A stretch of 64,000 nt of DNA, taken from positions 50,096,001 through 50,160,000 of the forward strand of contig NC_092355.1 in NCBI RefSeq assembly GCF_963676685.1. The letters run 5' to 3'. The notes under the pieces are model-generated. The model made no database searches. It saw only the letters and a list, made by a program, of their open reading frames with translations, and was not told where the DNA came from. A program made the position numbers and the translations under genes. Each line of letters begins with the position of its first letter. Positions within the stretch are counted from its first letter, which is position 1. Source of the DNA: Mytilus edulis. Lineage: Eukaryota. Below are positions 8,241-52,399 of this stretch, one piece after another.

Positions 8241-9139
8241 TTTGTTATCTATTAATCATGTTTTTCTGTGTCTAATATGTTCTCCTATTTATTTGTATTG
8301 TAGTCCTGTAATATTATGTTGTCATTTCAATGTTATATTTAACTTTGCCATTAAAGTGCGAGGTTTGGCATGCCTTAAAACCAGGTTCAACCCACCACTT
8401 TTATTCCCCTTTAAAAGTGTCCTGTACCAAGTCAGGAAGATGGTCATTGTTATATATTGTTCGTTTCTCTTTGTGTTGCATTTTAACGTTGAGTCGTTTG
8501 TGTTTTCTCTTATTTTTGAGATATTGAGATAAGACGTGGCACGGTACTTGTCTATCCCAAATTCATGTATTTGGTTTTCATGTTACATTTGTTATTCTCG
8601 TGGTGTTTTGTCTGATGATTGGTCTGTTTCTGTGTGTGTTGCGTTTCGATGTTGTGTCGTTGTTCTCCTCTTATATTTAATGCGTTTCGCTCGGTTTTGG
8701 TTTGTTACCCCGATTTTGTTTTTTGTCCATGGATTTATGAGTTTTGAACAGCGGTATACTACTGTTGCCTTTAAGTAACTATTCTAACTTTTAGGTTCTC
8801 CTGCCCTATTTGTTTATTATGTCTATAATTTAATCTATTTTTGTTTTAAGAAATTTAATTAGTATAGATGTTTCCCAGACTATATTTGTATATTCAAATA
8901 TTAGTCTTACAACAGAAAAAATATAGTTTTTGTATTTTTAACCTTTTTTGGTTTAAAATAAACATAAAATGTATCTAACTACGTCAATCATTTTGTCAAT
9001 TGAGGATACACTTTCTTTAAGGATGTTTGGTCCTCTGTTTCAAAAAAAGAAGCTTGAATATAAGACTCCTGCTCTGTATCCAATGAAATTTATCTTTGGA
9101 ATTGTGAGGTTCAAATGTCTTGAAATATAAATATATATA

Positions 9140-10071
9140 TTTATACTACAATCGTTCTATTTGAGCAGTCAAAATGCTTTGACTTCGGTGTTGACATGAA
9201 TATCAATTATATGGTCATTTTTATAAATTTCCTGTTTACAAAACTTTGGATTTATAAAAAAACTAAGGATTTTCTGACCCCAGGAGTAGATTACCTGAGC
9301 CGTATTTGGCACAACGTTTTGGAAATTTGGGTCCTCAATGCTCTTCAACTTTGTATTTGTTTGGCTTTTTAACGGTTTTGATCTGAGCGTCACTGGTGCG
9401 TTTTATGTAGACGAAACGCGCGTCTGATGTATTAAATTATAATCCTGGTAATTTGATAACTATGTGACTGTATATTTCTTTGTCATATACAGTCACTGAC
9501 CCGATATCACTTTTCCTCATGAATATTTAAATAGAAGAAGACGAAATTATATTTAATTATTCATACGACCTTCTCAACCTGTTCTTGTTTCCAATGTATA
9601 CAATAATGCGTGGAACGACTCAAACTTGTTTCTTCACAATTTTTGGTAACACATATTTCACTTGGTAATATTTTTTGTTTACAACATATACATCAGTATT
9701 TTTTTTATGTTTATTACTGATATTTTAGTCCATACTCGAACAAATTCGTTCACAATCGATTGCGGGTTTCAACAAGTAATGTACATTTCATAGTGCTGTA
9801 TATTTTTCCGCCTGCATAATATGAGGCCTTTTTAAAGGGGAATTTTCCCAAAAATGTAAATCAAATAAATAACATCAACACAAAAAAATTGAAAACGTTT
9901 TTTTAAGATTGCAGTATAAAGACAATAATAGTGCATTGACTTGCCATATCAACGATAAAAGGATTCGGCACCAAATGGGGAAAAGCTCGGCAGAGCCTCG
10001 CATTTCCCCATGTCTAAGCCTCATCCTTATATCGTTGTTATATCAAGTCAATGCACTATTATTGTCTGTAT
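9140..10071 (+). mobile_element. non-autonomous foldback element, Crypton-like, copy 1 (interrupted by a retrozyme)
   Basis: Inverted homolog at 51757-52399; ~146-nt hairpin 9921-10066 with GCTCGGCAGAGCCTCGC in the loop; Crypton assignment is inference from the loop motif. Confidence 0.6.
9178..9464 (+). mobile_element. retrozyme copy with degenerate type I hammerhead
   Basis: Absent from the homologous element near 52355; contains CGTCA-CTGGTGC-GTTTTATGTAGAC-GAAA-CGCGC-GTC-TGATG (core CUGAUGA mutated). Confidence 0.75.
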
Positions 10072-10558
10072 ATATATCTTTGTCAACAGGACAAGTTAAT
10101 ATTTTGTCAATTTTTTTTGAAAATTAAAGGAGTCAAATCTATACTAGCCAAAGTGTCGAGTACCGCTCAATTTCACTAAATCTTGTCTTATCTATTTATG
10201 AGTTTCAATATTTATTTCCTAATGGTATGTAAAATAGTGTTTGTTGTTATATGTGTTTCAATAAATATAAATAAAGGATACAAGATGAAATAAGTTTCGT
10301 TCTTGTTTATTACCATGTATAAGAATAGTTTTATGCAAGATCCCATCTTAAGTACCCAGATATTTTCGCTACGCTTATGGTAGACTTAGTTAGAAAGGCC
10401 CACTAGTAGAGATTGTTGCAAGATCCTCGATCTTTTTACCTCAGGTATACATGTTGGTCTTCAAATGGGTATGACGCGTATGAATTTTTTATGGACCGAT
10501 CCAAACATGATATTTCAATAAATCGTTGTCAAAGCCTATCCCAGCACCCCAACTCCAT

Positions 10559-10711
10559 AGATCATAAGGTGTTTCGAACATCTATTTAGACCAATTAGAA
10601 TTAACTAATTGACCATGGCCATGTCCATCGTCAGGAGCCCAAGCCATTGCATAGTGACACTTATTATAAAAATACTGTAATTTTTATTAGGGGCTCGACA
10701 CCTCATGATCT
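10559..10711 (-). ncRNA. type III hammerhead ribozyme (unit B copy 1)
   Basis: Minus strand: AGATCATGAGGT-GTC-GAGCCC...GGGCTC-CTGACGA-T-GGACAT...ATGTTC-GAAAC-ACCTTATGATCT; stem III 14 bp, stem I 6 bp, stem II 6 bp, full catalytic core; predicted cleavage between 10697 and 10696. Confidence 0.9.
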
Positions 10712-10803
10712 GTTTTATATTTTTCTATACTCTTTATCTACTTAACTTTGTTTATCAATTTAACGAACAAAGTTTAGAAACTATTTTCATAATCTGCAAC
10801 ATA

Positions 10804-11422
10804 TCAATTACCCAGAGTTGCTGATGTTACTGTGTCTTTCAAGTTTTTATGCATACGGAAAGCAAACAGAGGTCTTTTATCAAATAAAATAAAATGTTTG
10901 CCTCTTCGTCATCCTTCAATGTATCCCATTGATTTAAGATATTGTTCTTTACGTGTGATTTCTGTCTTGAAAACACTGTTGAGAATACCAAGGGAGGCCA
11001 CTGTAATACAGATTTGGGCTTTACCATTAATGTGTCTTTTCTTTGTTTTGCAGTCACTTCCTGCATAACCGGTTCATATCCAGATTTTGTTAAAAAAGGG
11101 ATGACGTTTAAAAATTTCACCCTTGTCAAAATGATATTTACATCTTAGTTTTCTTGCAAATTCATTGAAATCTGATGCAATACTAGATTTTGCAAATTTG
11201 GTCGAGGGAGACGGTAGATATTTTAATCCTATACTGAGTAACAAAATCTCATCGTCTTTTATTTTTTCAGTGGTGAATATTTTAACATATTCACGTGCTT
11301 TTTCAATTGATTTTTTTCCTCTTGAGAGAGCGAATCTATATCTTTCTATTTTCTGATAGAAGGCCTTTTTCATGATAGCCTTTTTTGTTTTTTTCGCTCT
11401 CTTAAAGTGTCTGTTAGCCATG
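10804..11422 (-). pseudogene. internally deleted PLE ORF (N-terminus fused to C-terminus, RT core missing, two frameshifts), copy 1
   Basis: MANRHF...LLSIGLKYLPSP...DFNEFARKLRCKY...HPF /fs/ TKSGYEP...PPLVFSTVFS...WDTLKDDEEANILF /fs/ DKRPLFAFRMHKNLKDTVTSATLGN*; aligns by eye with both ends of the 649-aa unit A protein. Confidence 0.85.
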
Positions 11423-12631
11423 CTTACAGATCGGAGGAAATCGCCAGAAGGCAGTGTGCAATTCATTTCTTGATGTTATATTGATTCTTTATCAAGCCTG
11501 TATGAACTCACCAACCAATCAGATATCAGTTACTCATTAGGAAACTAAATAAGGGGAAGAGGAGAACATCCCTCCTAGACATTGCAACCAATCACCATTC
11601 ATTGCTTTATAAACTAACACGTTTACCAGATGCATTTTGACAATTTGACTTTTTAATTTATCAGACAATCAAAAAGCATACATTTTTGTTTTGCAAATCT
11701 CAGCACTTTCTTATCAACTTATTCCTCTCACTAAAAATCTCTGACGTATTGGTTTTTACATTTACTTTCCTTGTATTATCATGTATGTATTACAACTTTA
11801 ACATGAAATTGACATAATTAATCAACCCTTTAACCTTTCGGTATAGATATTTTTCCAATTTAATATCTATTTTGACAGAAATGAAAAACACATTATCAAT
11901 GCACTATTGCTATTGCCGATAATAACCGTTGCATTTAATTATAACGTATTAATTATGACCACTTATCGTAAACAAATATCAAAAATTATCTTTGATGGTT
12001 TTATTTCTCAACTTTAAATAAAGATATATTTGTAAACATTTGTTTATCATCATAATTACATTGGGTTCATTGATAAACTAACCTTCTTTGTTCTGCTCTA
12101 TCAATTATCTATAAATTAAGCGTAACTCAAGAACTGATAAGATATTACACTTTTATTTACACACTTTACAGCTGTTTGTCAAAAAACATCACTAACGAAG
12201 TGTATAGGCACACGTTACATGTTTTATCTTCTTCCAATGACTTATCTGATGTTACACAGTTCAGTTAAATCATATCCATCGCTAGTTGCATTTATGTAAT
12301 TCAAGTTTGTTTATAAAACTGTATAAAATATAAAGCCATAACAGATCACTTGTGGGACTGCCCTTAAAGTGTCAGATTGCAATTTGAGACGATGTGGGTA
12401 AAACCCCAATTTTTTAGCATTGCTGATGATAGATATTTCCTCCAGTGAATAAGCAAATACAGGAAATTGCAGCAGTGTTCAAAATGCACCAAATAACCAC
12501 TTTATTGTGGTACGAGGAGATCATAAAGTCAACAAGATGTCAACTAAACAATTCTCAGGCTGACAGCGTGATAATAGCTCAAATATTTCAATAAATCGTT
12601 GTCAAAGCCTATCCCAGCACCCCAACTCCAT

Positions 12632-12784
12632 AGATCATAAGGTGTTTCGAACATCTATTTAGACCAATTAGAATTAACTAATTGACCATGGCCATGTCCA
12701 TCGTCAGGAGCCCAAGCCATTGCATAGTGACACTTATTATAAAAATACTGTAATTTTTATTAGGGGCTCGACACCTCATGATCT
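12632..12784 (-). ncRNA. type III hammerhead ribozyme (unit B copy 2)
   Basis: Same sequence as 10559-10711, offset 2073. Confidence 0.9.
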
Positions 12785-12876
12785 GTTTTATATTTTTCTA
12801 TACTCTTTATCTACTTAACTTTGTTTATCAATTTAACGAACAAAGTTTAGAAACTATTTTCATAATCTGCAACATA

Positions 12877-13495
12877 TCAATTACCCAGAGTTGCTGATGT
12901 TACTGTGTCTTTCAAGTTTTTATGCATACGGAAAGCAAACAGAGGTCTTTTATCAAATAAAATAAAATGTTTGCCTCTTCGTCATCCTTCAATGTATCCC
13001 ATTGATTTAAGATATTGTTCTTTACGTGTGATTTCTGTCTTGAAAACACTGTTGAGAATACCAAGGGAGGCCACTGTAATACAGATTTGGGCTTTACCAT
13101 TAATGTGTCTTTTCTTTGTTTTGCAGTCACTTCCTGCATAACCGGTTCATATCCAGATTTTGTTAAAAAAGGGATGACGTTTAAAAATTTCACCCTTGTC
13201 AAAATGATATTTACATCTTAGTTTTCTTGCAAATTCATTGAAATCTGATGCAATACTAGATTTTGCAAATTTGGTCGAGGGAGACGGTAGATATTTTAAT
13301 CCTATACTGAGTAACAAAATCTCATCGTCTTTTATTTTTTCAGTGGTGAATATTTTAACATATTCACGTGCTTTTTCAATTGATTTTTTTCCTCTTGAGA
13401 GAGCGAATCTATATCTTTCTATTTTCTGATAGAAGGCCTTTTTCATGATAGCCTTTTTTGTTTTTTTCGCTCTCTTAAAGTGTCTGTTAGCCATG
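12877..13495 (-). pseudogene. internally deleted PLE ORF, copy 2
   Basis: Same as 10804-11422, offset 2073. Confidence 0.85.
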
Positions 13496-14730
13496 CTTAC
13501 AGATCGGAGGAAATCGCCAGAAGGCAGTGTGCAATTCATTTCTTGATGTTATATTGATTCTTTATCAAGCCTGTATGAACTCACCAACCAATCAGATATC
13601 AGTTACTCATTAGGAAACTAAATAAGGGGAAGAGGAGAACATCCCTCCTAGACATTGCAACCAATCACCATTCATTGCTTTATAAACTAACACGTTTACC
13701 AGATGCATTTTGACAATTTGACTTTTTAATTTATCAGACAATCAAAAAGCATACATTTTTGTTTTGCAAATCTCAGCACTTTCTTATCAACTTATTCCTC
13801 TCACTAAAAATCTCTGACGTATTGGTTTTTACATTTACTTTCCTTGTATTATCATGTATGTATTACAACTTTAACATGAAATTGACATAATTAATCAACC
13901 CTTTAACCTTTCGGTATAGATATTTTTCCAATTTAATATCTATTTTGACAGAAATGAAAAACACATTATCAATGCACTATTGCTATTGCCGATAATAACC
14001 GTTGCATTTAATTATAACGTATTAATTATGACCACTTATCGTAAACAAATATCAAAAATTATCTTTGATGGTTTTATTTCTCAACTTTAAATAAAGATAT
14101 ATTTGTAAACATTTGTTTATCATCATAATTACATTGGGTTCATTGATAAACTAACCTTCTTTGTTCTGCTCTATCAATTATCTATAAATTAAGCGTAACT
14201 CAAGAACTGATAAGATATTACACTTTTATTTACACACTTTACAGCTGTTTGTCAAAAAACATCACTAACGAAGTGTATAGGCACACGTTACATGTTTTAT
14301 CTTCTTCCAATGACTTATCTGATGTTACACAGTTCAGTTAAATCATATCCATCGCTAGTTGCATTTATGTAATTCAAGTTTGTTTATAAAACTGTATAAA
14401 ATATAAAGCCATAACAGATCACTTGTGGGACTGCCCTTAAAGTGTCAGATTGCAATTTGAGACGATGTGGGTAAAACCCCAATTTTTTAGCATTGCTGAT
14501 GATAGATATTTCCTCCAGTGAATAAGCAAATACAGGAAATTGCAGCAGTGTTCAAAATGCACCAAATAACCACTTTATTGTGGTACGAGGAGATCATAAA
14601 GTCAACAAGATGTCAACTAAACAATTCTCAGGCTGACAGCGTGATAATAGCTCAAATATTTCAATAAATCGTTGTCAAAGCCTATCCCAGCACCCCAACT
14701 CCATAGTTTATCAATGTCTGTATGAACTCA

Positions 14731-15957
14731 CCAAAAATTCACCGTCTTGAAACAGAGACGTTTAAACAAATACAACATGATGGATTAAATGAATTAAATA
14801 TAATTCCACCTGGCAGACCAATTATATCACAGTGTGGTTCTGTAACTGAACTTATAGGTCATTACGTTGACTATTTTCTTATACCAATAGTTCAAAATCA
14901 GTCTACATATATAAAAGATACTACATCGTTCATTAATATCATTGAGAAATTAAAACCTATGGCAAACAGCCTTTTGGTTTCATATGATATAACACAGATG
15001 TTTACTAATCTACCTCAAGAAGCGTTATTGAGTGCGGTTGAACGAGCCTATGACAGTTTTGACAAATCAAACTTCAAAGTCAATGCTCCGCCAGTCAATG
15101 TATTAATACATTTGTTGAGAATTATTTTAGAAAACAATGTATTTGAATTTGATGGGAAAATTTACAAACAAGTAATAGGTACGGCAATTGGTGCAGTTCC
15201 TTCACCGGAAATCTGTGACATACTTATGTTTGAAATAATGAATCAAATTATTTCTGCATTTCAATATAAAGACAAAATATTCTATCATGGCAGATATAGA
15301 GACGATGGATTCATAATATATGATGGAACATCAGATGAAATTATAGATTTTTTTCGTCTAGCAAATGATTATAACCCCTTATTAAAGTTCACCTATGAAA
15401 TCAAAAACGATAAAATGTCGTTCTTGGATGTTGATGTAATTAAAGGTCAAAGATTTACAACATATGGCATTCTTGACCTCGAAATACATTTTAAAGAAAC
15501 AAATTCTTATCTGTTTCTGCACAGAAATAGCTGTCACTCACAGCATGTATTCAGAGGATTTATTAAAGGTGAAGCAATACGGCAAATTAGAAATACAAGT
15601 GATCATAACAAATTAATAAACAATCTAACTAATTTCAAAGTGAAATTATTAGATAGGGGTTATGATAACGTGGAAATAGATGATAGTATTACTGATGCTT
15701 TATCAATTGACCGTACTGATTTATTACAACAAAACAAATCTAAAGAGAAGCAAAGTATTCCGTTAGTTTTAATAACTAAATATAATCCATATATACGTAA
15801 AATAAAGAAACGTATAATGAAACACTGGCATTTATTACAGTTCGACGAAGACTGTGTACAAATATTCAATACAGCACCAATAGTTGCGTATAGCAAACAT
15901 AAAAGTATTGGAGATATGCTTAGTAGATCAAAGTTAAAGACTTTAACATTAAATTGA
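14731..15957 (+). pseudogene. 5'-truncated copy of the PLE RT ORF
   Basis: Identical to the C-terminal ~408 aa of the full ORF; the ATG at 14722 lies in junction filler sequence. Confidence 0.85.
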
Positions 15958-15962
15958 CAGTT

Positions 15963-16136
15963 GGACCCCTGATGATGGTAGATCTGTCATAATAACTAGA
16001 TATTTTGAAGAAGAATTAAAATATAAATATATCAATATGATAATTTTCATATTAGATTATATTCAAATAATGCATCTTAAAATGACCATCCCAAGCTTAA
16101 CTACCGAAACACGAAATTGATATTTGTGTCGGGTCC
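15963..16136 (+). ncRNA. type I hammerhead ribozyme with 119-nt loop II insert (unit A copy 1)
   Basis: GGACCC-CTGATGA-T-GGTAG-[119 nt]-CTACC-GAAAC-ACGAAATTGATATTTGT-GTC-GGGTCC; all three stems pair; predicted cleavage after C16130. Confidence 0.88.
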
Positions 16137-16566
16137 TATCAGCAATATGGGATGCGTGGTTGCATGGGTGTTTTATTATAACAAAATGTATTCATGGACG
16201 GCTGTCCTACTGCACCTTACCGAGAATCGTTTTCTGCATGGAGAATGATCCGCATTTCCTGTTTGATGGGATACGTATATGGTGTTAATTTATTGTTCCG
16301 GTGGACAAAGCTTTTAGCCTTGAGTTGAAAATACTTCATGACATGATTTACTTTGAAAAGTTCCACAAAACAATGTGACTCATTTATACATCATCAACAC
16401 GGACAATTTATCACTGCTATCTTATCCCCGCCTATCAACCCACGTGAATTTGGGCGGATCTTCTTTCAAGGTTTATAACATGTGTAAATCTAAAAATTCT
16501 TCAGCCACCCAATGTGAGCTCAACAAAGGCACGTAGCTAAGAGAATCACCCAATGTGAACTCAAAA

Positions 16567-18516
16567 ATGGCACGTCGTTTTAATAGAAATGCTAAAAAGC
16601 AAAAATTCCGATTCTACAATAAAAAAGAACGGAATAAATACAATATGCAGCAAAGAACTGCACATGCAAAAAAGCATGTAATTAATCTATCAAAACGCAG
16701 ATTATCAAATCAGGAATATATCCTGTTGGCGAAAGGCTTGAAATTTATACCAACGCCATCAAGCAAAAATGCAAAAATGTCTATACTAAAAGACTACAAT
16801 GAATTTGCTAGAAAATTACGATGTCGGTATATGTTCAGTCAAGAAAAAACTGACCTTCATCCATTTCGTAGCAATACAGGATATAAACCTGCCTCTACGT
16901 GCCATACGTTGGAAAATTATATAGATTTAACCAAGCTTGAATTGTCTTTTCTACCAATAGAAAGAAATGTAAAAAACAATCTTACTAAAGGCGAAAGAAT
17001 AGCGCTACGCAATTTGAAAAATGATGAAACAATAGTAATAAAAAAGGCAGATAAAAATTCAAATTGTGTTATTTTAGACAGGCTAGACTACATAACAGAA
17101 GTCACAAGACAACTAAATACTCAACATTACTGCCAATTAGATTCATTTAACATGGCAGAACTGAAAATCCAGGTCATTGAGTATATTAAATCATTATACG
17201 ACCAAGGCATAATCGACAAAATATCATTTAAATTTTTAACAAATGGTCAAAAATTAAGAGATGCACGATTAGGGAGAATTTATATTCTCCCAAAAATTCA
17301 CCGTCTTGAAACAGAGACGTTTAAACAAATACAACATGATGGATTAAATGAATTAAATATAATTCCACCTGGCAGACCAATTATATCACAGTGTGGTTCT
17401 GTAACTGAACTTATAGGTCATTACGTTGACTATTTTCTTATACCAATAGTTCAAAATCAGTCTACATATATAAAAGATACTACATCGTTCATTAATATCA
17501 TTGAGAAATTAAAACCTATGGCAAACAGCCTTTTGGTTTCATATGATATAACACAGATGTTTACTAATCTACCTCAAGAAGCGTTATTGAGTGCGGTTGA
17601 ACGAGCCTATGACAGTTTTGACAAATCAAACTTCAAAGTCAATGCTCCGCCAGTCAATGTATTAATACATTTGTTGAGAATTATTTTAGAAAACAATGTA
17701 TTTGAATTTGATGGGAAAATTTACAAACAAGTAATAGGTACGGCAATTGGTGCAGTTCCTTCACCGGAAATCTGTGACATACTTATGTTTGAAATAATGA
17801 ATCAAATTATTTCTGCATTTCAATATAAAGACAAAATATTCTATCATGGCAGATATAGAGACGATGGATTCATAATATATGATGGAACATCAGATGAAAT
17901 TATAGATTTTTTTCGTCTAGCAAATGATTATAACCCCTTATTAAAGTTCACCTATGAAATCAAAAACGATAAAATGTCGTTCTTGGATGTTGATGTAATT
18001 AAAGGTCAAAGATTTACAACATATGGCATTCTTGACCTCGAAATACATTTTAAAGAAACAAATTCTTATCTGTTTCTGCACAGAAATAGCTGTCACTCAC
18101 AGCATGTATTCAGAGGATTTATTAAAGGTGAAGCAATACGGCAAATTAGAAATACAAGTGATCATAACAAATTAATAAACAATCTAACTAATTTCAAAGT
18201 GAAATTATTAGATAGGGGTTATGATAACGTGGAAATAGATGATAGTATTACTGATGCTTTATCAATTGACCGTACTGATTTATTACAACAAAACAAATCT
18301 AAAGAGAAGCAAAGTATTCCGTTAGTTTTAATAACTAAATATAATCCATATATACGTAAAATAAAGAAACGTATAATGAAACACTGGCATTTATTACAGT
18401 TCGACGAAGACTGTGTACAAATATTCAATACAGCACCAATAGTTGCGTATAGCAAACATAAAAGTATTGGAGATATGCTTAGTAGATCAAAGTTAAAGAC
18501 TTTAACATTAAATTGA
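16567..18516 (+). CDS. Penelope-like reverse transcriptase, 649 aa, no GIY-YIG domain
   Basis: First ATG at 16567; PLE N-terminal motifs VINLS...LAKGLKFIP, KKADK, LPKIH, PGRPIIS; RT motifs YDITQMFTNL, QVIGTAIG, RYRDDG, FLDV; ends at PIVAYSKHKSIGDML, where the endonuclease linker normally begins. Confidence 0.93.
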   Translation: MARRFNRNAKKQKFRFYNKKERNKYNMQQRTAHAKKHVINLSKRRLSNQEYILLAKGLKFIPTPSSKNAKMSILKDYNEFARKLRCRYMFSQEKTDLHPFRSNTGYKPASTCHTLENYIDLTKLELSFLPIERNVKNNLTKGERIALRNLKNDETIVIKKADKNSNCVILDRLDYITEVTRQLNTQHYCQLDSFNMAELKIQVIEYIKSLYDQGIIDKISFKFLTNGQKLRDARLGRIYILPKIHRLETETFKQIQHDGLNELNIIPPGRPIISQCGSVTELIGHYVDYFLIPIVQNQSTYIKDTTSFINIIEKLKPMANSLLVSYDITQMFTNLPQEALLSAVERAYDSFDKSNFKVNAPPVNVLIHLLRIILENNVFEFDGKIYKQVIGTAIGAVPSPEICDILMFEIMNQIISAFQYKDKIFYHGRYRDDGFIIYDGTSDEIIDFFRLANDYNPLLKFTYEIKNDKMSFLDVDVIKGQRFTTYGILDLEIHFKETNSYLFLHRNSCHSQHVFRGFIKGEAIRQIRNTSDHNKLINNLTNFKVKLLDRGYDNVEIDDSITDALSIDRTDLLQQNKSKEKQSIPLVLITKYNPYIRKIKKRIMKHWHLLQFDEDCVQIFNTAPIVAYSKHKSIGDMLSRSKLKTLTLN

Positions 18517-18521
18517 CAGTT

Positions 18522-18695
18522 GGACCCCTGATGATGGTAGATCTGTCATAATAACTAGATATTTTGAAGAAGAATTAAAATATAAATATATCAATATGAT
18601 AATTTTCATATTAGATTATATTCAAATAATGCATCTTAAAATGACCATCCCAAGCTTAACTACCGAAACACGAAATTGATATTTGTGTCGGGTCC
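18522..18695 (+). ncRNA. type I hammerhead ribozyme (unit A copy 2)
   Basis: Same as 15963-16136, offset 2559. Confidence 0.88.
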
Positions 18696-19125
18696 TATCA
18701 GCAATATGGGATGCGTGGTTGCATGGGTGTTTTATTATAACAAAATGTATTCATGGACGGCTGTCCTACTGCACCTTACCGAGAATCGTTTTCTGCATGG
18801 AGAATGATCCGCATTTCCTGTTTGATGGGATACGTATATGGTGTTAATTTATTGTTCCGGTGGACAAAGCTTTTAGCCTTGAGTTGAAAATACTTCATGA
18901 CATGATTTACTTTGAAAAGTTCCACAAAACAATGTGACTCATTTATACATCATCAACACGGACAATTTATCACTGCTATCTTATCCCCGCCTATCAACCC
19001 ACGTGAATTTGGGCGGATCTTCTTTCAAGGTTTATAACATGTGTAAATCTAAAAATTCTTCAGCCACCCAATGTGAGCTCAACAAAGGCACGTAGCTAAG
19101 AGAATCACCCAATGTGAACTCAAAA

Positions 19126-21075
19126 ATGGCACGTCGTTTTAATAGAAATGCTAAAAAGCAAAAATTCCGATTCTACAATAAAAAAGAACGGAATAAATAC
19201 AATATGCAGCAAAGAACTGCACATGCAAAAAAGCATGTAATTAATCTATCAAAACGCAGATTATCAAATCAGGAATATATCCTGTTGGCGAAAGGCTTGA
19301 AATTTATACCAACGCCATCAAGCAAAAATGCAAAAATGTCTATACTAAAAGACTACAATGAATTTGCTAGAAAATTACGATGTCGGTATATGTTCAGTCA
19401 AGAAAAAACTGACCTTCATCCATTTCGTAGCAATACAGGATATAAACCTGCCTCTACGTGCCATACGTTGGAAAATTATATAGATTTAACCAAGCTTGAA
19501 TTGTCTTTTCTACCAATAGAAAGAAATGTAAAAAACAATCTTACTAAAGGCGAAAGAATAGCGCTACGCAATTTGAAAAATGATGAAACAATAGTAATAA
19601 AAAAGGCAGATAAAAATTCAAATTGTGTTATTTTAGACAGGCTAGACTACATAACAGAAGTCACAAGACAACTAAATACTCAACATTACTGCCAATTAGA
19701 TTCATTTAACATGGCAGAACTGAAAATCCAGGTCATTGAGTATATTAAATCATTATACGACCAAGGCATAATCGACAAAATATCATTTAAATTTTTAACA
19801 AATGGTCAAAAATTAAGAGATGCACGATTAGGGAGAATTTATATTCTCCCAAAAATTCACCGTCTTGAAACAGAGACGTTTAAACAAATACAACATGATG
19901 GATTAAATGAATTAAATATAATTCCACCTGGCAGACCAATTATATCACAGTGTGGTTCTGTAACTGAACTTATAGGTCATTACGTTGACTATTTTCTTAT
20001 ACCAATAGTTCAAAATCAGTCTACATATATAAAAGATACTACATCGTTCATTAATATCATTGAGAAATTAAAACCTATGGCAAACAGCCTTTTGGTTTCA
20101 TATGATATAACACAGATGTTTACTAATCTACCTCAAGAAGCGTTATTGAGTGCGGTTGAACGAGCCTATGACAGTTTTGACAAATCAAACTTCAAAGTCA
20201 ATGCTCCGCCAGTCAATGTATTAATACATTTGTTGAGAATTATTTTAGAAAACAATGTATTTGAATTTGATGGGAAAATTTACAAACAAGTAATAGGTAC
20301 GGCAATTGGTGCAGTTCCTTCACCGGAAATCTGTGACATACTTATGTTTGAAATAATGAATCAAATTATTTCTGCATTTCAATATAAAGACAAAATATTC
20401 TATCATGGCAGATATAGAGACGATGGATTCATAATATATGATGGAACATCAGATGAAATTATAGATTTTTTTCGTCTAGCAAATGATTATAACCCCTTAT
20501 TAAAGTTCACCTATGAAATCAAAAACGATAAAATGTCGTTCTTGGATGTTGATGTAATTAAAGGTCAAAGATTTACAACATATGGCATTCTTGACCTCGA
20601 AATACATTTTAAAGAAACAAATTCTTATCTGTTTCTGCACAGAAATAGCTGTCACTCACAGCATGTATTCAGAGGATTTATTAAAGGTGAAGCAATACGG
20701 CAAATTAGAAATACAAGTGATCATAACAAATTAATAAACAATCTAACTAATTTCAAAGTGAAATTATTAGATAGGGGTTATGATAACGTGGAAATAGATG
20801 ATAGTATTACTGATGCTTTATCAATTGACCGTACTGATTTATTACAACAAAACAAATCTAAAGAGAAGCAAAGTATTCCGTTAGTTTTAATAACTAAATA
20901 TAATCCATATATACGTAAAATAAAGAAACGTATAATGAAACACTGGCATTTATTACAGTTCGACGAAGACTGTGTACAAATATTCAATACAGCACCAATA
21001 GTTGCGTATAGCAAACATAAAAGTATTGGAGATATGCTTAGTAGATCAAAGTTAAAGACTTTAACATTAAATTGA
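19126..21075 (+). CDS. Penelope-like reverse transcriptase, 649 aa, second full copy
   Basis: Translation identical to 16567-18516. Confidence 0.93.
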   Translation: MARRFNRNAKKQKFRFYNKKERNKYNMQQRTAHAKKHVINLSKRRLSNQEYILLAKGLKFIPTPSSKNAKMSILKDYNEFARKLRCRYMFSQEKTDLHPFRSNTGYKPASTCHTLENYIDLTKLELSFLPIERNVKNNLTKGERIALRNLKNDETIVIKKADKNSNCVILDRLDYITEVTRQLNTQHYCQLDSFNMAELKIQVIEYIKSLYDQGIIDKISFKFLTNGQKLRDARLGRIYILPKIHRLETETFKQIQHDGLNELNIIPPGRPIISQCGSVTELIGHYVDYFLIPIVQNQSTYIKDTTSFINIIEKLKPMANSLLVSYDITQMFTNLPQEALLSAVERAYDSFDKSNFKVNAPPVNVLIHLLRIILENNVFEFDGKIYKQVIGTAIGAVPSPEICDILMFEIMNQIISAFQYKDKIFYHGRYRDDGFIIYDGTSDEIIDFFRLANDYNPLLKFTYEIKNDKMSFLDVDVIKGQRFTTYGILDLEIHFKETNSYLFLHRNSCHSQHVFRGFIKGEAIRQIRNTSDHNKLINNLTNFKVKLLDRGYDNVEIDDSITDALSIDRTDLLQQNKSKEKQSIPLVLITKYNPYIRKIKKRIMKHWHLLQFDEDCVQIFNTAPIVAYSKHKSIGDMLSRSKLKTLTLN

Positions 21076-21080
21076 CAGTT

Positions 21081-21254
21081 GGACCCCTGATGATGGTAGA
21101 TCTGTCATAATAACTAGATATTTTGAAGAAGAATTAAAATATAAATATATCAATATGATAATTTTCATATTAGATTATATTCAAATAATGCATCTTAAAA
21201 TGACCATCCCAAGCTTAACTACCGAAACACGAAATTGATATTTGTGTCGGGTCC
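21081..21254 (+). ncRNA. type I hammerhead ribozyme (unit A copy 3)
   Basis: Same as 15963-16136, offset 5118. Confidence 0.88.
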
Positions 21255-22958
21255 TATCAGCAATATGGGATGCGTGGTTGCATGGGTGTTTTATTATAAC
21301 AAAATCGATTTCTCAAATGAATAACAAAAATATAAAGATATCAAGATTTGGTATGATTACCAAGGAGGCAACTTTCTTCCAGTGTTCAAATGAAATCAAT
21401 GTAAGCAATCAAACGAATCGTACGACCTTCAACAATTAGAAGACCTATAACGTATGGTCGGTTATTGAAGGCGCCGACATAAAAAAAAAATAGGAAACAA
21501 TGTAAACGATGAAACCAAAGGTCTAATTTATAACAAAATGAAATACAAATATTGTAGACATCAACAACAACAATTGAACTACAATCTCGGTGTCTTAAGA
21601 CAGGCAAAAACGAGGGTGACGGGATTGATAAAGCTTGTGTAAGAACAAACTGTTAAAACAGACATCGGGTTAACTCAAAAACTCGGCACGATAACTGTTG
21701 TATCCCTTTGTAATAATAGATTGTATGTGTCCAACTGATGTTATGGTAAACATAAACAATGTTCTCATTTTATGTTTTTTCATGACTTTTATTTATTATG
21801 TTAAAAAAAAAAAATACGATATAATTTAGATTATATGTGTTTGAATAATGATATCGAAAATGAAAACTACTTATCCTCTATACATATTGTATATTGTATT
21901 TGTGTTGATAAGAGTAGTACATGTATATTAACCAATCAAAAAGAGAAATATGACACAAAACTAGATCATATGTTCTCAATTGATGATCATGATGATGTAG
22001 AAATAGAAAACAGTGTAATATGTAATTTATCTTATATGTATGTTTATTCACAAAATACCAACAAAAACATATGTCTGAAAGAAACAGATAATTTTAAAAC
22101 AAGCATTAAACCAACAAAAAGAAAAAACTTTTATTCACTAGTTAACAAAATGAAACGATCACTAGTTCTACTATCCACGTCATTAGGCTGTATTTGTTTA
22201 ATTCGGTTCATCACCAAAATGCTTTTATTACACGTAAGCACTGATTGTACAAACAAATCTTCTATTTTCTGCAATTCAAACAAGGATAATCGGAAAATAT
22301 ACCAACCACTTCATATTCCTACGAAAATTGCAAATATGGTACGCAACTACATGTAGTATATCACCAAATACCGCATCACAAACAGGAAGTACGAAACGAA
22401 TTGCACTCATATATTTTTGCACCATACTATCAAGACACACATATTCCACAACCAGCTATGCTAATCTTTTTGACGCAGTATATTCACTTGAAGTACAGAT
22501 CCATATCTTATTAAAACACATGATACACACATGTACAGCAGCGTTAAGTGAACATTTAAAAATCTCCAAAGAATTCTACACAAAAAGATATCATTTCCAG
22601 GTTCAAATGTATGGAAAATTTAAGACGTCATCAAAAACTGTTGAGAATATATTTCATTTGACCACAGTTATAATGTTGATGAGCACTCGAACACTCCTTA
22701 TTGAACAATTCAAATATCTGAAAATAGAAAAAGTAATTTCTGAAAATCAAGCTCCGATATACATACAGGCACAAGTACAAAACTGTATTATTGTAAAAAA
22801 CACATATTATAATGATACATATATATTATATATACTCATGCATTACTACTATTATACGTTTAGTCATAGTTGTATTGTATACAACAACTTAAAACAGTTT
22901 GTTATGATGTATATCTCTGTAGTAATCTTTGCTAATACATGTATAGTTCATTATTTAG

Positions 22959-25900
22959 ATGAGTAATAATTTAAATATTTGCTCCTTGAACTGCCAAGGG
23001 CTAGGAAAAAAAGAAAAGCGAGACAGACTATATATTTGGTGTGAAAATCAAAAATGTGACATCTTGTTTATTCAAGAGTCCCATTTCACCGATAAAAACA
23101 TAAATGTAATAAATAGTGAAACTAAATGTAAGATATACCATAGCTTTGGCAATTCCCTATCCAGAGGTGTTTCAATTTTAATTAAAGAAAACATAAATCA
23201 CAAAATAATAAATGAAATTAAAGATGAGGAGGGCAGGTTTATTCTAATTAATGTAGAACTTGATAATAACATCTTCACTTTAGTTAATTTTTATGCACCA
23301 AATATACAAAGAAATAGAAATTCTTTCTTCAAAAAAATAAACAACTTAATTGAAAATAATAGATTAGGCATTTTAATACTTGGAGGGGATATAAATGAAA
23401 GTCTGACTGAAAACGACAGAAAAAGTACAAGTACACAAAAATTTAATAAACCTGTAAATAGTTTGAAACAATTAATAAAAAAACATAAGTTAGTTGATAT
23501 ATGGAGAGAAATTAACCCAAACAAAAGACAGTTCACCTGGAGAAGGAAAAATAACTTTAACATAGCAAGCAGAATAGATTATTTTCTTATTAGCTCTGAT
23601 ATAAGACCACATATTACAGCAGCAGATATTAGACCCGCTGCTATTTCTTACACTGATCATCAGGCAATTTCATTAAAGCTAAGACACAAAGCACACAGTA
23701 GAGGCCGAGGTTTCTTTAAAATTAATAACAGTATATTGAATGACACAAAATATCAAAATCTCATTAATAACTTAATTCAAACTTATAAACAAAAAATACT
23801 TACTACGGCTGTAGATCCTCGAGTTAAGTGGGACGTTTTTAAAGCTGAAGTAAGAGACATAACCATTAAATACTGTAGGCAAAAACAAGCTGAAAATAAA
23901 AATGAAATAATTAAATTAGAACTGTCATTAAAAAAATTGAACGAAAATGCAGAAAACTTACAGGATAATAATGTTCAAAATAGAATAAACAATGCTGAGA
24001 AAAAACTAGAGAACCTTTACATAAATGAAGCAAAGGGAGCTCAGGTTAGATCACGTGTAAAATGGACAGAAGAAGGAGAAAAAAACACAAAATTTTTTAT
24101 AGGCCTTGAAAAATCCAGACAAACTCATAAAAATATTTCTGCACTTACGAATGAAAAAGGAGAAATTATAACAGATTCATCTGAAATTTTAAAGTTAGAA
24201 AAAAACTTCTATGAAAATTTATATAAAAGTACAAATCCTAATGAAAATGAAATAAAAAAATATATAACAGAAACAAAAGTAGATAAAACTCTTTCTCATG
24301 AGGAAACTCAAAATCTAGAAGGGGAGCTTACCATAAAGGAATGTACAGAAGCTATTAAATCTATGAAATTAAATAAATCACCGGGCATCGACGGGATCAG
24401 TGTAGAATTTTATCGAACCTTCTGGACAAATTTAAAAGAAATTGTTGTTAAAGTTTTTAACACATGCTATCAAAAGGAAGAAATGAGCACACTACAAAAA
24501 ATAGGAGTAGTCTCTTTATTATATAAAAAGGGAAACCCACTTCTTTTAGACAACTATAGACCAATTACTTTACTCAATGTTGATACAAAGCTTATGGCAT
24601 ATTCTTTAGCACAACGTCTTAAACCAATACTAACTAAAATCATCCATAGTGACCAAAATGGTTACATAAAAAATAGATATATAGGTTTCAACATTCGTCA
24701 AATTCAAGACATAATAGACCATGCAGAATACTTTAATATTGAAGGAGCATTGCTCTTCATAGATTTTTCCAAGGCCTTTGACTCATTGGAATGGCCATTT
24801 ATGTATGAAGCACTCAAGAAATTCGGCCTTCCAAATCCTTTTATCAAATGGGTTAAAACTCTGTACAAAGACATAACGGGTTGTATGTTAAACAATGGGT
24901 GGGTCTCATCACCATATAACATTAATCGCGGTATTAGACAAGGCTGCCCGTTAAGTTCCCTGATTTTTGTTATTGCTGTAGAAATTTTGTCCTGCAGAAT
25001 AAGACAAGACAACAACATCAAAGGTTTTCAAATTAAGTTAGATACTAAAACACACAGTTTAAAGATTTCTCAATTAGCTGACGACACAACACTTTTTCTA
25101 AAATCAAAAAATGAAGTACGTCACACTCTTAATATTATTGAAATCTTTGGAACGCTATCAGGTTTAAAATTAAATAGATCAAAAACTGAGGGCATTTGGT
25201 TAGGAAAATTAAAACATTGTAAAGATAAGTTTGAAAATATAACATGGAATAAAGGACCAATAAAAAGTCTAGGAGTTTATTTTGGAACAGATCGAGCTGA
25301 ATGTGATAAGCTGAATACTGAAAAAATAATACAGAAATGTGACAAATTAATAAGTAATTGGAAAAAAAGAAATCTTACAATGATAGGTAAAATAACAGTT
25401 GTAAAATCTCTTCTTATACCTAACCTTACATATTTAGCTTCAGTCACAAACCTACCACATGAATTTATTCAACAGTTTAAAACTATTATCTACAATTTTA
25501 TATGGGATGGTAAACGAGAAAAGGTCAAACGAACCACCCTTAGCAAAAATACTACTACGGGAGGGCTTAAAATGACAGATATAGACAATTATATAACTGC
25601 ACTACAAATAGCATGGATAAAAAGACTTACTGCAGATGATTTTGCTAACTGGGAAGTAATTCCGACATTTTACTTTAATAAATTTGGTGCTAATTTCATG
25701 CTACTTTACATGAATCTAGACAACATTTACTCAATACAAAACCTACATAAAACTTTACCAAAATTCTACTTAGAAATTGTAAAGTCTTGGTTCAAAGTAC
25801 AAAATTTAAATAATACCAAACTCAATATGAATTTTAAAAACATTAGACAACAAATCTTATGGGGAAACAAACTGATAAAATTTCAAGGAAAGTGTTTAGT

Positions 25901-26068
25901 TTTTATAAATTGGATAAAAGAAGGTATTATATACGTTAACGATATAATAGACCAAAATGGTAATATCTCTCAAGAAATAATATCTAATAAAATATCCTCA
26001 AAATCCAATTTAATGTTTGAAATTTCAAAACTTAATTATGCCTTACCAAATGAATGGCTCAAGGTACT
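22959..26068 (+). CDS. LINE ORF2 5' part (APE endonuclease + RT), interrupted by the CACTA insertion
   Basis: APE motifs SLNCQGL, IQESH, GGDIN, SRIDY, TDH; RT motifs KSPGIDG, YRPITLLN, DFSKAFDS, GIRQGCPLS, QLADD. Confidence 0.93.
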
Positions 26069-49500: not shown

Positions 49501-50197
49501 TAAATCAGAAAAATCAATAAAATCAAAAGTAAAAAATAAACTTAACCTTTGCATCAATACAAAAGAAAAAAATAAGATAATAATTTTACAAGTAATGGAA
49601 ACAAAACAGATATACAAACACATTAATAGTGGAAATGAAGACACGCCTCCAGGTTTCTCTAAATGGAAACGTGTCCTAAATTTAGATTCGTTAATTCCAA
49701 TTAAATCAATGCTTAACTTTATATTTACTTATTTAAAAGATAACAGATTAAAAATATTTAAATGGAAATTGCTGCATCATATCCTTCCTTGCAAACAATT
49801 GCTTTTGCAATGGAAGATTAAAGAAGACAGTAAATGCGACTTATGTAATGTAACAGAAGATTATAAACATTTTTTCCTAGAATGTCGTTACTTTAAAACT
49901 TTTTGGGAAAAGATCAAAATACTATTAAATAAAGTTAAAATAGGTCATCATATCCTAAACTACAGAAATCTCATTATAGGATATAAAATCGGTGATATCA
50001 ATTATTATGATATAAATCTGTTGGTGACACTCATTACATTTTCTATCCACAAGTGCACTCACAGTTCAAATTATAAAACTACAAATTGTGATGTGTATGC
50101 CCTGTTCAAAAAAGATTTTTTGAACTACTTCAATATTTCGACACTTTCAGGTGGTAAACATGGTAAAATTTTGAAGGAAATAAGCTTATACATATAA
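49501..50197 (+). CDS. LINE ORF2 3' part with C-terminal CCHC zinc-binding motif
   Basis: Joins in frame with 26068 (...WLKV-L-KSEKSIKSK...METKQIY...); CDLCNVTEDYKHFFLEC motif; reconstructed ORF 1268 aa. Confidence 0.9.
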
Positions 50198-51756: not shown

Positions 51757-52399
51757 TATATAGACAATAATAGTGCATTGACTTGACATATCAGCGATAT
51801 AAGGATGAGGCTTAGAAACGGGGAAATGCGAGGCTGTGCTGAGCATTTTCCCCGTTTTGGGCCGAATCCTTATATCGTTGATATGTCAAGTCAATGCACT
51901 ATTATTGTCTTTATACTGCAATCTAAACAAAAACATTTTCAATTGTTGTTTATTGTGTTAATGTTATTTTTTTTAATTTAAATATTGGGGAAAATCCCCC
52001 TTTAAAAAGGCCTCATATCACACAGACGGAGAAATATAAAACACGACGAAATGTACATCATTACCGCAATCAATGGTGAACGAATTCGTTGCAGACTAAA
52101 ATATCAACAATAAACATAAAACATAATGATTTATAGGTTGCAAACAAAAAAATATTAAAAAGTGAAATATGTTTTCCCGAAAATTGCTAAAGAAACAAGT
52201 TTGAGTCGTTAAACGCATCGTTGTTTACATTGAAAACAAGAACAGGTTGAAGAGGTCGTATGAATAATTAAACATAATTTCGACAATTTCTATTTAAATA
52301 TTCATGAGGAAAAGTGATATCAGGTCAGTGACTGTATATGACATAGAAATATACGGTCAACGCATTTTGACTGCTCAAATAGAACGAGTGCAGTATAAA
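51757..52399 (-). mobile_element. non-autonomous foldback element, Crypton-like, copy 2
   Basis: Reverse-complement homolog of 9140-10071 without the retrozyme insert; hairpin 51763-51909. Confidence 0.6.

What the first reader, a model, noticed from the sequence alone, without database searches (positions are those of the whole stretch)
10510..21305. Two-component, endonuclease-less Penelope-like system with hammerheads, inserted head-to-head as tandem multimers: a candidate RT-encoding retrozyme plus satellite
Seen: 2.57 apparently identical copies of unit A (intact RT, ribozyme right after the stop codon) on + and 2.02 copies of a different but related unit B (RT core deleted, its own ribozyme) on -. 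Their 3' ends point outward, their 5' ends are fused, and there is no TSD. Both arrays read through the predicted self-cleavage site repeatedly. Established: canonical PLEs need GIY-YIG for internal insertion, and retrozymes form circular RNA by hammerhead cleavage but encode no protein. Inference: each unit is a ribozyme-processed circular RNA copied by rolling-circle reverse transcription. The two ends of one DNA break each primed a different circle, with A's RT acting on B in trans. This would be an RT-coding circular-RNA retroelement linking PLEs and retrozymes.
Basis: partly seen in the sequence, partly recalled or inferred. Interest (0 to 1): 0.93.

Follow-up and report, generated by a model that had tools for sequence, protein, structure and literature searches.

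The report
Endonuclease-less Penelope-like retrotransposons, inserted head-to-head
Two young tandem arrays of Penelope-like retrotransposons from a mussel-type lineage that has no endonuclease lie head-to-head; most of this layout is standard for such elements, and the circular-RNA explanation is an older published idea that this DNA cannot test.

Summary
Unit A (2559 nt) repeats exactly over 14731-21305 (+), 2.57 copies. Unit B (2073 nt) repeats exactly over 10510-14706 (-), 2.02 copies. The 3' ends point outward, a 24-nt filler sits between the 5' ends, and there is no target-site duplication.

The host is Mytilus edulis. A encodes an intact 649-aa telomerase-like Penelope-like element (PLE) reverse transcriptase (RT) that stops just before the point where relatives carry GIY-YIG. 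It belongs to a deep, well-supported group of about 90 sampled endonuclease-less representatives. B is an internal-deletion derivative of a different family of that group (P0075-like, 41% aa identity to A), so A acting on B in trans is not supported.

Both units, and a 42%-identical relative, carry a three-helix hammerhead after the ORF, with compensatory changes in all helices. Rfam misses it.

Partial tandems, an adjacent inverted copy, short fillers and 3' ends downstream of the ribozyme are textbook PLE anatomy. [quoted passage not shown]

What looks new: a large endonuclease-less animal PLE lineage seen here at an internal, non-telomeric site, and a co-insertion of two different families. 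The latter looks like two ends of one break priming cDNA synthesis.

Circle and read-through templates cannot be told apart here.

The parts
10510..14706 (-). Array B: a 51-nt partial unit (14656-14706) followed by two complete 2073-nt units (12583-14655 and 10510-12582). The 3' end of the element is at 10510.
   Evidence: Exact period 2073.
13147..13539 (-). B N-terminal ORF remnant (130 aa). The conserved start, aligned with A's Met1, is at 13494. A second copy lies at 11074-11466.
   Evidence: ORF list. 84% aa identity to P0075 residues 1-130 and 38% to A residues 1-120.
12960..13166 (-). B C-terminal RT remnant, out of frame with the N-terminal piece. The RT core (about aa 130-570 of the parent) is deleted. 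A second copy lies at 10887-11093.
   Evidence: 77% aa identity to P0075 residues 570-643.
12634..12782 (-). B hammerhead motif, type III layout. Order: helix III 5' strand, GUC (cleavage C at 12770), helix I hairpin (6 bp, 50-nt loop), CUGACGA, an unpaired U, helix II (6 bp, 39-nt insert), GAA, helix III 3' strand (up to 12 bp). A second copy lies at 10561-10709.
   Evidence: Descriptor scan. The minimum-free-energy fold keeps helices I and III, z = -3.4.
14707..14730 (-). Junction filler between the two 5' ends. It resembles, but is not identical to, a piece of the B-family 5' UTR: the shared 15-mer GGTGAGTTCATACAG occurs at 13571-13585 and 11498-11512. The match overlaps the first 2 nt of array A, i.e. 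2-nt microhomology.
   Evidence: The 15-mer occurs three times against 0.07 expected by chance. Sequence read.
14731..21305 (+). Array A: a 5'-truncated unit (14731-16187, starting inside the RT at about aa 243) followed by two complete 2559-nt units (16188-18746 and 18747-21305). The 3' end of the element is at 21305.
   Evidence: Exact period 2559.
16567..18516 (+). A ORF: a 649-aa PLE-type RT (N-terminal domain, RT, thumb) with no endonuclease. A second copy lies at 19126-21075, and a truncated copy at 14731-15957.
   Evidence: RVT_1, weak. (99% identity to Mytilus edulis proteins). (ends where the EN+ relative P0109 continues into a Cys linker and GIY-YIG). (pLDDT 93.9; best structural matches are telomerase RTs).
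15963..16136 (+). A hammerhead motif, type I layout. Order: helix I (6 bp), CUGAUGA, an unpaired U, helix II (5 bp, 119-nt insert), GAA, helix III hairpin (7 bp), GUC (cleavage C at 16130), helix I 3' strand. Further copies lie at 18522-18695 and 21081-21254.
   Evidence: Descriptor scan. The fold keeps helices I and III. A homologous motif with compensatory helices is present in L002.
16137..16187 (+). 51-nt module between the 3' edge of the hammerhead and the fixed 3' end of the insertion, taken as the presumed internal start site of reverse transcription. The same 51-nt distance is found in B (12633-12583 on -).
   Evidence: Coordinates. No significant shared fold.

Best explanation
The locus is one recent compound insertion of two endonuclease-less Penelope-like retrotransposons from different families of the same deep EN-less lineage. 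A is autonomous. B is an RT-deleted derivative of a P0075-like family.

Proposed steps:
1. A chromosomal break exposed two facing 3'-OH ends, at 10509 on the + strand and 21306 on the - strand.
2. Each end primed reverse transcription at a fixed internal site 51 nt downstream of the element's hammerhead.
3. The template in each case was an RNA longer than one unit, giving a 2.0-unit and a 2.6-unit cDNA.
4. The two cDNAs met and were joined with a 24-nt template-switch filler and 2 nt of microhomology, leaving no target-site duplication.

Shown: the anatomy, the missing endonuclease, the hammerhead motifs and the family relationships.
Inferred: that this was a single event, how the break arose, and what form the template took.
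For: Arrays and identity:
- Both arrays are exact and internally 100% identical. Each is therefore young and each is the product of one copying event.

Geometry:
- The 3' ends point outward. There is no poly(A), no TSD and no telomeric repeat.

3' ends:
- They lie 57 nt (A) and 187 nt (B) past the cleavage site, and exactly 51 nt past the ribozyme's 3' edge in both.
- The template was therefore not a cleaved linear monomer primed at its end. Reverse transcription started internally, as shown in vitro for the canonical PLE PAc, which also extends both DNA strands (PMC11167929).

Junction:
- The filler matches a B-family 5' UTR segment but differs from this B copy, which fits a template switch.

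Endonuclease absence:
- No GIY-YIG in any frame of the window.
- PF01541 is listed for none of the 120 best homologues.
- All sampled full-length relatives with at least 32% identity lack a GIY-YIG-sized C-terminal extension. Three or four gene models run 60-140 aa longer, none with a GIY-YIG motif.
- About 90 EN-less representatives sit on one side of a branch with SH-aLRT 100.
- 8 of 10 sampled long relatives do carry GIY-YIG.

RT intact:
- The catalytic Asp residues are invariant in the alignment.
- The fold is confident and telomerase-like.

Hammerhead:
- It is conserved, with compensatory pairs in helices I, II and III, across A, B and L002.

Literature:
- Tandem plus inverted copies are standard PLE anatomy (PMC8557442).
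Against: - No empty-site allele or second genome could be examined. A single event versus two successive insertions is therefore not settled.
- The origin of the break is unknown. An endonuclease supplied in trans is not excluded.
- Hammerhead activity is untested. Rfam does not recognise the motifs. One 98.9%-identical copy (L001) has a U-to-C change that breaks the proposed helix II of A.
- The copy number inside each array rests on one assembly.
Confidence: 0.6

Rival explanations
1. Each unit is cut out of a transcript by its hammerhead and ligated into a 2559-nt or 2073-nt circular RNA. It is then copied by rolling-circle reverse transcription from the ends of a DNA break. This would make it an RT-encoding retrozyme (A) with a satellite (B).
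For: - There is one complete three-helix hammerhead per unit, with a real helix III of 7-12 bp. Canonical animal PLEs instead have minimal, dimer-dependent motifs (PMC4209133).
- The units are perfectly identical.
- The insertion ends lie beyond the cleavage site, so the template was either re-ligated or uncleaved.
- The ORF does not span the cleavage site.
- The same pathway was proposed for PLEs in PMC4209133. Mussels do make retrozyme circles (PMC7229834).
Against: - Nothing in the DNA separates a circle from an uncleaved multimeric transcript.
- A tandem array of A exists in another sample (L001), and gene models on five M. edulis chromosomes hint at more. These could give read-through templates.
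- For the one PLE tested, ribozyme mutants inserted normally and no RNA ends mapped to the cleavage site (PMC11167929).
- B belongs to another family, so 'satellite of A' is unsupported.
Confidence: 0.2
2. Two independent, successive insertions. One array landed first and the other later inserted at or next to its 5' junction, for example because PLE ribonucleoproteins prefer PLE sequence or fragile junctions.
For: - PLEs are reported to home to their own pseudo-LTRs and AT-rich DNA (PMC11167929).
- The two arrays belong to different families.
- The filler could be a remnant of the first event.
Against: - Both arrays show zero internal divergence, so both are very young.
- No TSD or flank sequence lies between them, only 24 nt of PLE-like filler.
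- The head-to-head geometry is what two-ended priming predicts and what PLEs normally show.
Confidence: 0.2
3. The DNA ends were made by an endonuclease supplied in trans, either the GIY-YIG of an EN+ PLE in the same genome or the AP endonuclease of a LINE, rather than by a spontaneous break. This is compatible with the main explanation and concerns only step 1.
For: - Bivalve genomes hold very many EN+ PLEs (PMC8557442).
- An apparently intact LINE with an AP endonuclease lies about 530 nt from the A array.
- The junction flanks are AT-rich.
Against: - There is no TSD, whereas staggered nicks would usually leave one.
- A lineage this deep and uniformly EN-less, with intact ORFs, suggests a self-sufficient way of finding 3'-OH ends.
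- No EN+ PLE is present in the window.
Confidence: 0.25
4. The multimers are not products of retrotransposition. They arose after insertion by unequal exchange or replication slippage, or they are an assembly artefact.
For: Tandem repeats can expand by unequal crossover, and perfect identity is also what an assembler produces when it mis-resolves repeats.
Against: - Two unrelated arrays with different periods, sharp non-unit boundaries and a unique junction are hard to obtain from one artefact.
- An independent contig from another sample also spans more than one A unit.
- Multi-unit insertions are normal for PLEs.
Confidence: 0.07

Closest known systems
Canonical EN+ Penelope-like elements (Penelope/Poseidon, Neptune, Nematis)
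   Same: - Telomerase-like RT with the PLE N-terminal and thumb regions.
- Partial or multiple tandem copies with an adjacent inverted 5'-truncated copy and short fillers.
- A hammerhead motif between ORFs, with an unpaired base at the 5' side of helix II.
- Insertion 3' ends downstream of the ribozyme, and no poly(A).
   Different: - No GIY-YIG endonuclease or Cys linker.
- The hammerhead has a full helix III and large inserts, spanning 148-161 nt from C3 to the cleavage site. In the EN+ loci fetched here that span is about 30 nt.
- The inverted partner belongs to another family.
EN-deficient PLEs Athena and Coprina (Gladyshev and Arkhipova 2007, as summarised in PMC8557442)
   Same: - No endonuclease, and a hammerhead near the 3' end.
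- The hammerheads of fungal and protist EN- PLEs also have a large helix III and can cleave as monomers (PMC4209133).
   Different: - Athena and Coprina attach to telomeres through reverse-complement telomeric repeats at their 3' ends.
- Here there are no telomeric repeats anywhere in the 64 kb, and the site is internal, among genes and other transposons.
- Clade membership could not be tested because no reference sequences were available.
EN- families arising inside EN+ clades, e.g. the Neptune-like MjPLE01 of kuruma shrimp and Chlamys PLE-X (PMC8557442)
   Same: An animal PLE without endonuclease that must find 3'-OH ends some other way.
   Different: Those are described as occasional losses. 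Here the EN-less state is shared by about 90 sampled 50%-identity representatives across a deep branch. The relationship to MjPLE01 was not testable.
Metazoan non-LTR retrozymes (170-400 nt hammerhead repeats expressed as circular RNA, including in Mytilus)
   Same: One hammerhead per unit, head-to-tail tandem copies, the same host genus, and a presumed dependence on PLE RT.
   Different: Retrozymes are small and non-coding. Unit A is 2.6 kb and encodes its own RT. Circular RNA has not been shown for A or B.

Membership tests
Penelope-like elements (PLE) | PLE-type, telomerase-related RT with conserved N-terminal and thumb regions | tested here: met
   - Full-length homology to GIY-YIG-bearing PLE proteins.
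- Catalytic Asp residues invariant.
- Confident model whose best PDB matches are telomerase RTs (E 7e-9).
Penelope-like elements (PLE) | Partial or multiple tandem copies (pseudo-LTR organisation), often with an inverted 5'-truncated copy and a short extra 'tail' | tested here: met
   Arrays at 14731-21305 (+) and 10510-14706 (-) with a 24-nt filler. Description of the feature in PMC8557442. The inverted partner is from a different family.
Penelope-like elements (PLE) | Hammerhead ribozyme motif in the inter-ORF or pseudo-LTR region | tested here: met
   Motifs with a complete catalytic core and three helices in A, B and L002, with compensatory changes. Not recognised by Rfam. Cleavage activity not tested.
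Canonical EN+ PLE | GIY-YIG endonuclease fused to the RT, at the C-terminus or (Naiad/Chlamys) the N-terminus | tested here: not met
   - The ORF ends before the linker and GIY-YIG seen in P0109.
- No GIY-YIG-like coding in any frame of the window.
- No Pfam GIY-YIG hit.
- The N-terminus is the ordinary PLE N-terminal region.
Telomere-associated EN- PLE (Athena, Coprina) | 3' ends carrying reverse-complement telomeric repeats, and location at chromosome ends | tested here: not met
   No (TTAGGG)2 on either strand in 64 kb, even allowing 1 mismatch. The flanks hold a GPCR-like ORF, a LINE and a DNA transposon.
Telomere-associated EN- PLE (Athena, Coprina) | Phylogenetic placement of the RT within the Athena or Coprina clade | not testable with these tools
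   No named reference sequences of PLE clades were available by reference. The tree contains only unnamed database proteins.
Retrozymes (metazoan, non-LTR) | Small (about 170-400 nt) non-coding tandem unit with a type I hammerhead | tested here: not met
   The units are 2559 and 2073 nt. A encodes a 649-aa RT and B keeps ORF remnants. B's motif has a type III layout.
Retrozymes (metazoan, non-LTR) | Accumulation as unit-length circular RNA joined at the hammerhead site | not testable with these tools
   No RNA data were accessible.

The most novel reading that the evidence does not exclude
The bivalve EN-less lineage is an 'autonomous retrozyme'. It would be a protein-coding retroelement whose monomeric three-helix hammerhead releases unit-length RNA that is circularised. 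Its own RT would then copy that circle by rolling-circle synthesis from any free DNA 3'-OH at a break. This would explain both the loss of the endonuclease and the perfect multimers. RT-deleted units such as B would be on the path from PLEs to non-coding retrozymes.
Probability: 0.17. Interest if true: 0.85.

Novelty: new variant of a known kind. Interest (0 to 1): 0.55.

Why it matters
How PLEs build their tandem and inverted insertions, what their hammerheads are for, and how endonuclease-less retroelements enter chromosome interiors are all open questions.

This locus is an unusually clean natural specimen:
- zero divergence inside the arrays;
- exact ends;
- two different templates captured at one site;
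- a lineage that has apparently done without an endonuclease for a long time.

It gives defined 2559-nt and 2073-nt targets for testing the 2014 circular-RNA hypothesis in an accessible animal. It also gives a compact 649-aa RT for biochemical tests of break-primed, internally initiated reverse transcription.

If only the ordinary reading holds, the result is still useful. It would add a large unnamed EN-less PLE lineage to mollusc transposon annotation.

Tried and rejected
- **Rfam.** Searched at gathering score over the whole window and at E<=10 over 10-22 kb. No hammerhead was found, only a chance mir-2013 hit. The motifs were found only with my own descriptor, which allows long inserts.
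- **Chance control for the descriptor.** In 60 Markov shuffles of the window, a helix sum of at least 18 was reached twice. A single hit is therefore only modestly significant. The case rests on three independent lineages, the same position after the ORF, and compensatory pairs.
- **The look-up of encoding contigs.** Other genomic copies, empty sites and A/B co-insertions in Mytilus could not be fetched.
- **Viral contigs.** No relatives.
- **Metagenome contigs.** 80 loci were fetched, but only two (L001, L002) belong to the EN-less lineage. The rest are EN+ PLEs with compact hammerheads.
- **Prokaryote genome contigs.** One further EN-less member was found (L081, probably host DNA in a symbiont bin). 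It has a compact hammerhead in a different position.
- **Naming the hosts of deep members.** This failed because the sources give no names.
- **Shared stem-loop at the 3' start site of A and B.** Nothing significant.
- **Target-site duplication.** None found.
- **Telomeric repeats.** None found.
- **Sequence search of solved structures.** Nothing useful.
- **Filler as a piece of A's 5' UTR.** Rejected: it shares only an 8-mer with A, against a 15-mer plus an 8-mer with B.

Full report
**1. The observation**

The window has no N runs and about 32% G+C.

- **Array A.** Exact self-identity at period 2559 runs from 14731 to 21305 (2.569 units).
- **Array B.** Exact self-identity at period 2073 runs from 10510 to 14706 (2.025 units).
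- BLAST of one unit of each against the window returns only these arrays, all at 100%.
- **Unit A ORF.** On the + strand it carries a 649-aa ORF from the ATG at 16567 (and again at 19126). The first, 5'-truncated unit begins inside the RT.
- **Array B layout.** Read on the - strand, it is a 51-nt partial unit followed by two complete units.
- **Junction.** The two 5' ends are separated by 24 nt (14707-14730).
- **Ends.** The 3' ends (10510 and 21305) point outward. They carry no poly(A), and no direct repeat flanks them.

A and B are not close relatives: at DNA level they share one 94-nt stretch at 72%.

**2. What the units encode**

- **Host.** The A protein is 99% identical to annotated proteins of Mytilus edulis. 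Members of its 90% cluster sit on five different chromosome-sized contigs. Several have consecutive accession numbers on one chromosome, which hints at further tandem arrays.
- **Family size.** More than 1000 homologues were found with the word-indexed search. The exhaustive search found 19,851 representatives at E<=0.001.
- **Where the proteins end.** In a 15-sequence alignment, the 12 complete short proteins end at the same place. The canonical relative P0109 continues from that point into a Cys-rich linker and a GIY-YIG domain.
- **Extension versus identity.** The roughly 95 sampled full-length relatives with at least 32% identity to A lack a GIY-YIG-sized C-terminal extension. Three or four gene models are 60-140 aa longer, with no GIY-YIG motif. 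Below about 32% identity most relatives carry an extra 130-165 aa.
- **The extension is GIY-YIG.** 8 of 10 sampled long proteins match Pfam GIY-YIG in that extension.
- **Tree.** On a maximum-likelihood tree of the shared region, 90 rows (88 EN-less plus two over-long gene models) sit on one side of a branch with SH-aLRT 100. Path lengths inside that group exceed one change per site. The tree is unrooted and was built with the quick method.
- **No hidden endonuclease.** No frame of the window encodes anything like the endonuclease part.
- **Fold.** The A protein folds with high confidence (pLDDT 93.9). Its best structural matches are telomerase catalytic subunits.
- **Catalytic residues.** The catalytic Asp residues are invariant across 68 family members.

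So A is an apparently functional PLE RT from an old, diversified lineage that has no endonuclease. Named members are all bivalves (Mytilus, Pinctada, Saccostrea, Argopecten). The hosts of the deeper members could not be learned.

**3. Unit B**

- B keeps about 130 N-terminal residues and about 74 C-terminal residues of an RT. These are 84% and 77% identical to P0075, a Mytilus edulis protein of the same EN-less lineage that is only 41% identical to A. The RT core between them is deleted.
- B is therefore a non-autonomous derivative of a different family.
- If it needs a helper, the natural candidate is a P0075-like RT, not A. The 3' regions of A and B have no detectable DNA similarity.

**4. 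The ribozyme**

Rfam finds no hammerhead. A descriptor that allows long inserts finds five strong hits in the 64 kb, exactly one per unit. The layouts are as follows.

| Element | Layout | Helix I | Core | Helix II | Helix III |
|---|---|---|---|---|---|
| A | type I | GGACCC / GGGUCC | CUGAUGA + unpaired U | GGUAG / CUACC, 119-nt insert | ACACGAA / UUUGUGU hairpin, then C (16130) |
| L002 | type I, starts 38 nt after the stop | GGCCC / GGGCC | CUGAUGA + unpaired U | GGAUU / AAUCC | ACACUGC / GCAGUGU, 80-nt loop |
| B | type III (circularly permuted) | closed by a 50-nt loop | as above, cleavage site upstream of the core | GGACAU / AUGUUC | up to 12 bp |

- L002 is an EN-less relative at 42% aa identity, from a 4362-nt contig whose ends overlap by 111 nt.
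- Compared position by position, the three lineages differ by double, pair-preserving changes in all three helices. They keep the core, the extra U and the ACAC...GUGUC start of helix III.
- A single hit of this quality appears in about 1 of 30 shuffled windows. The case therefore rests on recurrence, position and covariation, not on one score.
- The unpaired base at the 5' side of helix II is a described trait of PLE hammerheads. A large helix III is described for the hammerheads of EN-deficient PLEs of fungi and protists, one of which cleaves well as a monomer (PMC4209133).
- By contrast, the EN+ PLE loci fetched here have compact motifs with about 30 nt between C3 and the cleavage site.

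Caveats:
- Activity is untested.
- A 98.9%-identical copy (L001) has a U-to-C change that breaks the proposed helix II of A but improves a local hairpin.
- Another clade member (L081) has a compact motif in a different place.

**5. Ends and junction**

- The insertion 3' ends lie 57 nt (A) and 187 nt (B) beyond the cleavage site. In both cases this is exactly 51 nt beyond the 3' edge of the ribozyme fold.
- This rules out one simple model, a cleaved linear monomer primed at its own 3' end. It means that reverse transcription began at an internal site of a longer or circular RNA.
- That is what was shown in vitro for the canonical PLE PAc. There, initiation occurs about 90 nt downstream of the hammerhead site on multi-copy transcripts, both DNA strands are cut and extended, ribozyme mutants insert normally, and no RNA-seq reads end at the cleavage site (PMC11167929).
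- The B array's 5' end (14706) is the nucleotide right after the extended helix III of its hammerhead. This suggests that the RT stopped at that structure.
- The 24-nt filler matches a segment of the B-family 5' UTR: a 15-mer plus an 8-mer, with three occurrences of the 15-mer against 0.07 expected. It differs from this B copy and overlaps A by 2 nt. This fits a template switch to another B-family RNA followed by microhomology joining.
- The + strand 3'-OH at 10509 and the - strand 3'-OH at 21306 face each other. That is the geometry of two-ended priming at one break.

**6. Comparison with what is known**

- Partial tandems, an adjacent inverted 5'-truncated copy and a 30-40 nt 'tail' are the textbook anatomy of PLE insertions (PMC8557442).
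- EN- PLEs are known in two forms: telomere-attached Athena and Coprina, and occasional losses inside EN+ clades such as the Neptune-like MjPLE01.
- The idea that PLE hammerheads release RNA that is circularised and used for more-than-unit reverse transcription, explaining head-to-tail tandems, was stated in 2014 (PMC4209133).
- PLEs as the mobilisers or ancestors of animal retrozymes, including in mussels, is also published (PMC7229834; bioRxiv 10.64898/2026.07.22.740005).
- I did not find the following in the searchable literature:
  - a large, deep, uniformly EN-less PLE lineage in animals that inserts at internal sites without telomeric repeats;
  - its expanded three-helix hammerhead;
  - a fresh head-to-head co-insertion of two different families.
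- The library holds open-access papers only, so prior description elsewhere is possible.

**7. Circle or read-through?**

Both predict identical units and internal ends. A tandem array of A is shown in another sample:

- L001 is a 2636-nt contig, 98.9% identical to A. It spans more than one 2566-nt unit.
- Its two overlapping ends differ at 3 of 70 positions, so neighbouring units there are not identical.

Several family-A gene models on five M. edulis chromosomes hint at further arrays. Their existence does not refute circles, but it removes the need for them. I rate the circular-RNA model at about 0.2.

**8. Limits**

No other Mytilus copies, empty sites or A/B co-insertions could be examined.
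- Named PLE clade references were not available by reference, so the clade was not named.
B's break points are described only.

**9. Verdict**

The finding is real and well described. Most of its striking features are ordinary for PLEs, and the proposed mechanism is a published but untested hypothesis. One specific claim, that A mobilises B, is not supported. The residual novelty is the EN-less animal lineage at an internal site, its full-size hammerhead, and the two-family compound insertion. This makes it a new variant of a known kind and a good experimental handle. Interest: 0.55.

Noticed in passing
window 21835-26078 (+): An apparently intact non-LTR (LINE) element starts about 530 nt to the right of array A. 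It has two ORF1-like ORFs (21835-22356 and 22328-22966) and a 1039-aa ORF2 with an AP endonuclease and RVT_1. Whether the PLE insertion relates to the LINE's 5' end was not examined.
   Followed up: partly
window 38907-41828 (+): A 973-aa ORF with a Transposase_21 (tnp2) domain, probably an intact DNA transposon.
   Followed up: no
window 5041-6363 (+): A 440-aa uninterrupted ORF with a secretin-family 7TM receptor domain (7tm_2, E 2e-11), apparently a single-exon GPCR-like gene or retrocopy.
   Followed up: no
window 49595-50197 (+): A 200-aa ORF with the zf-RVT domain, a fragment of another retroelement.
   Followed up: no
window 9465-10072 versus 51757-52359 (-); also 9188-9450 versus 60608-60873 (-): Dispersed repeats (80-85% identity) end about 350 nt to the left of array B. 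The immediate flanks of the insertion are unique within the window.
   Followed up: partly
window about 16505-16534 and 16546-16575 (+): The 5' UTR of unit A holds an imperfect ~30-nt direct repeat containing CCAAT. The second copy includes the start codon (read). This may be a duplicated promoter or start region.
   Followed up: no
window 16137-16187 (+) and 12583-12633 (-): In both families exactly 51 nt separate the 3' edge of the hammerhead fold from the insertion's 3' end. The 5' end of array B (14706) falls on the first nucleotide after its hammerhead. No shared fold was detected.
   Followed up: partly
L081:3094-6953 (contig labelled as a Sedimenticola MAG): This is probably host DNA binned with a symbiont. 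It is an EN-less member of the same lineage with a ~5.3-kb tandem unit, an extra upstream 516-aa ORF with no Pfam match, and a compact hammerhead upstream of that ORF. The locus has a gap at about 8376-8475 that was left as it is.
   Followed up: partly
L002:664-1392: The 4251-nt unit of this EN-less relative carries an extra 243-aa ORF upstream of the RT. It is unrelated to the L081 ORF1 and to anything in the window.
   Followed up: partly
L001 (2636-nt metagenome contig, 98.9% identical to unit A): The contig spans more than one unit (period 2566, with a 7-nt insertion in the helix II insert). Its two overlapping ends differ at 3 of 70 positions, so a heterogeneous tandem array of A exists in another sample.
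   Followed up: yes
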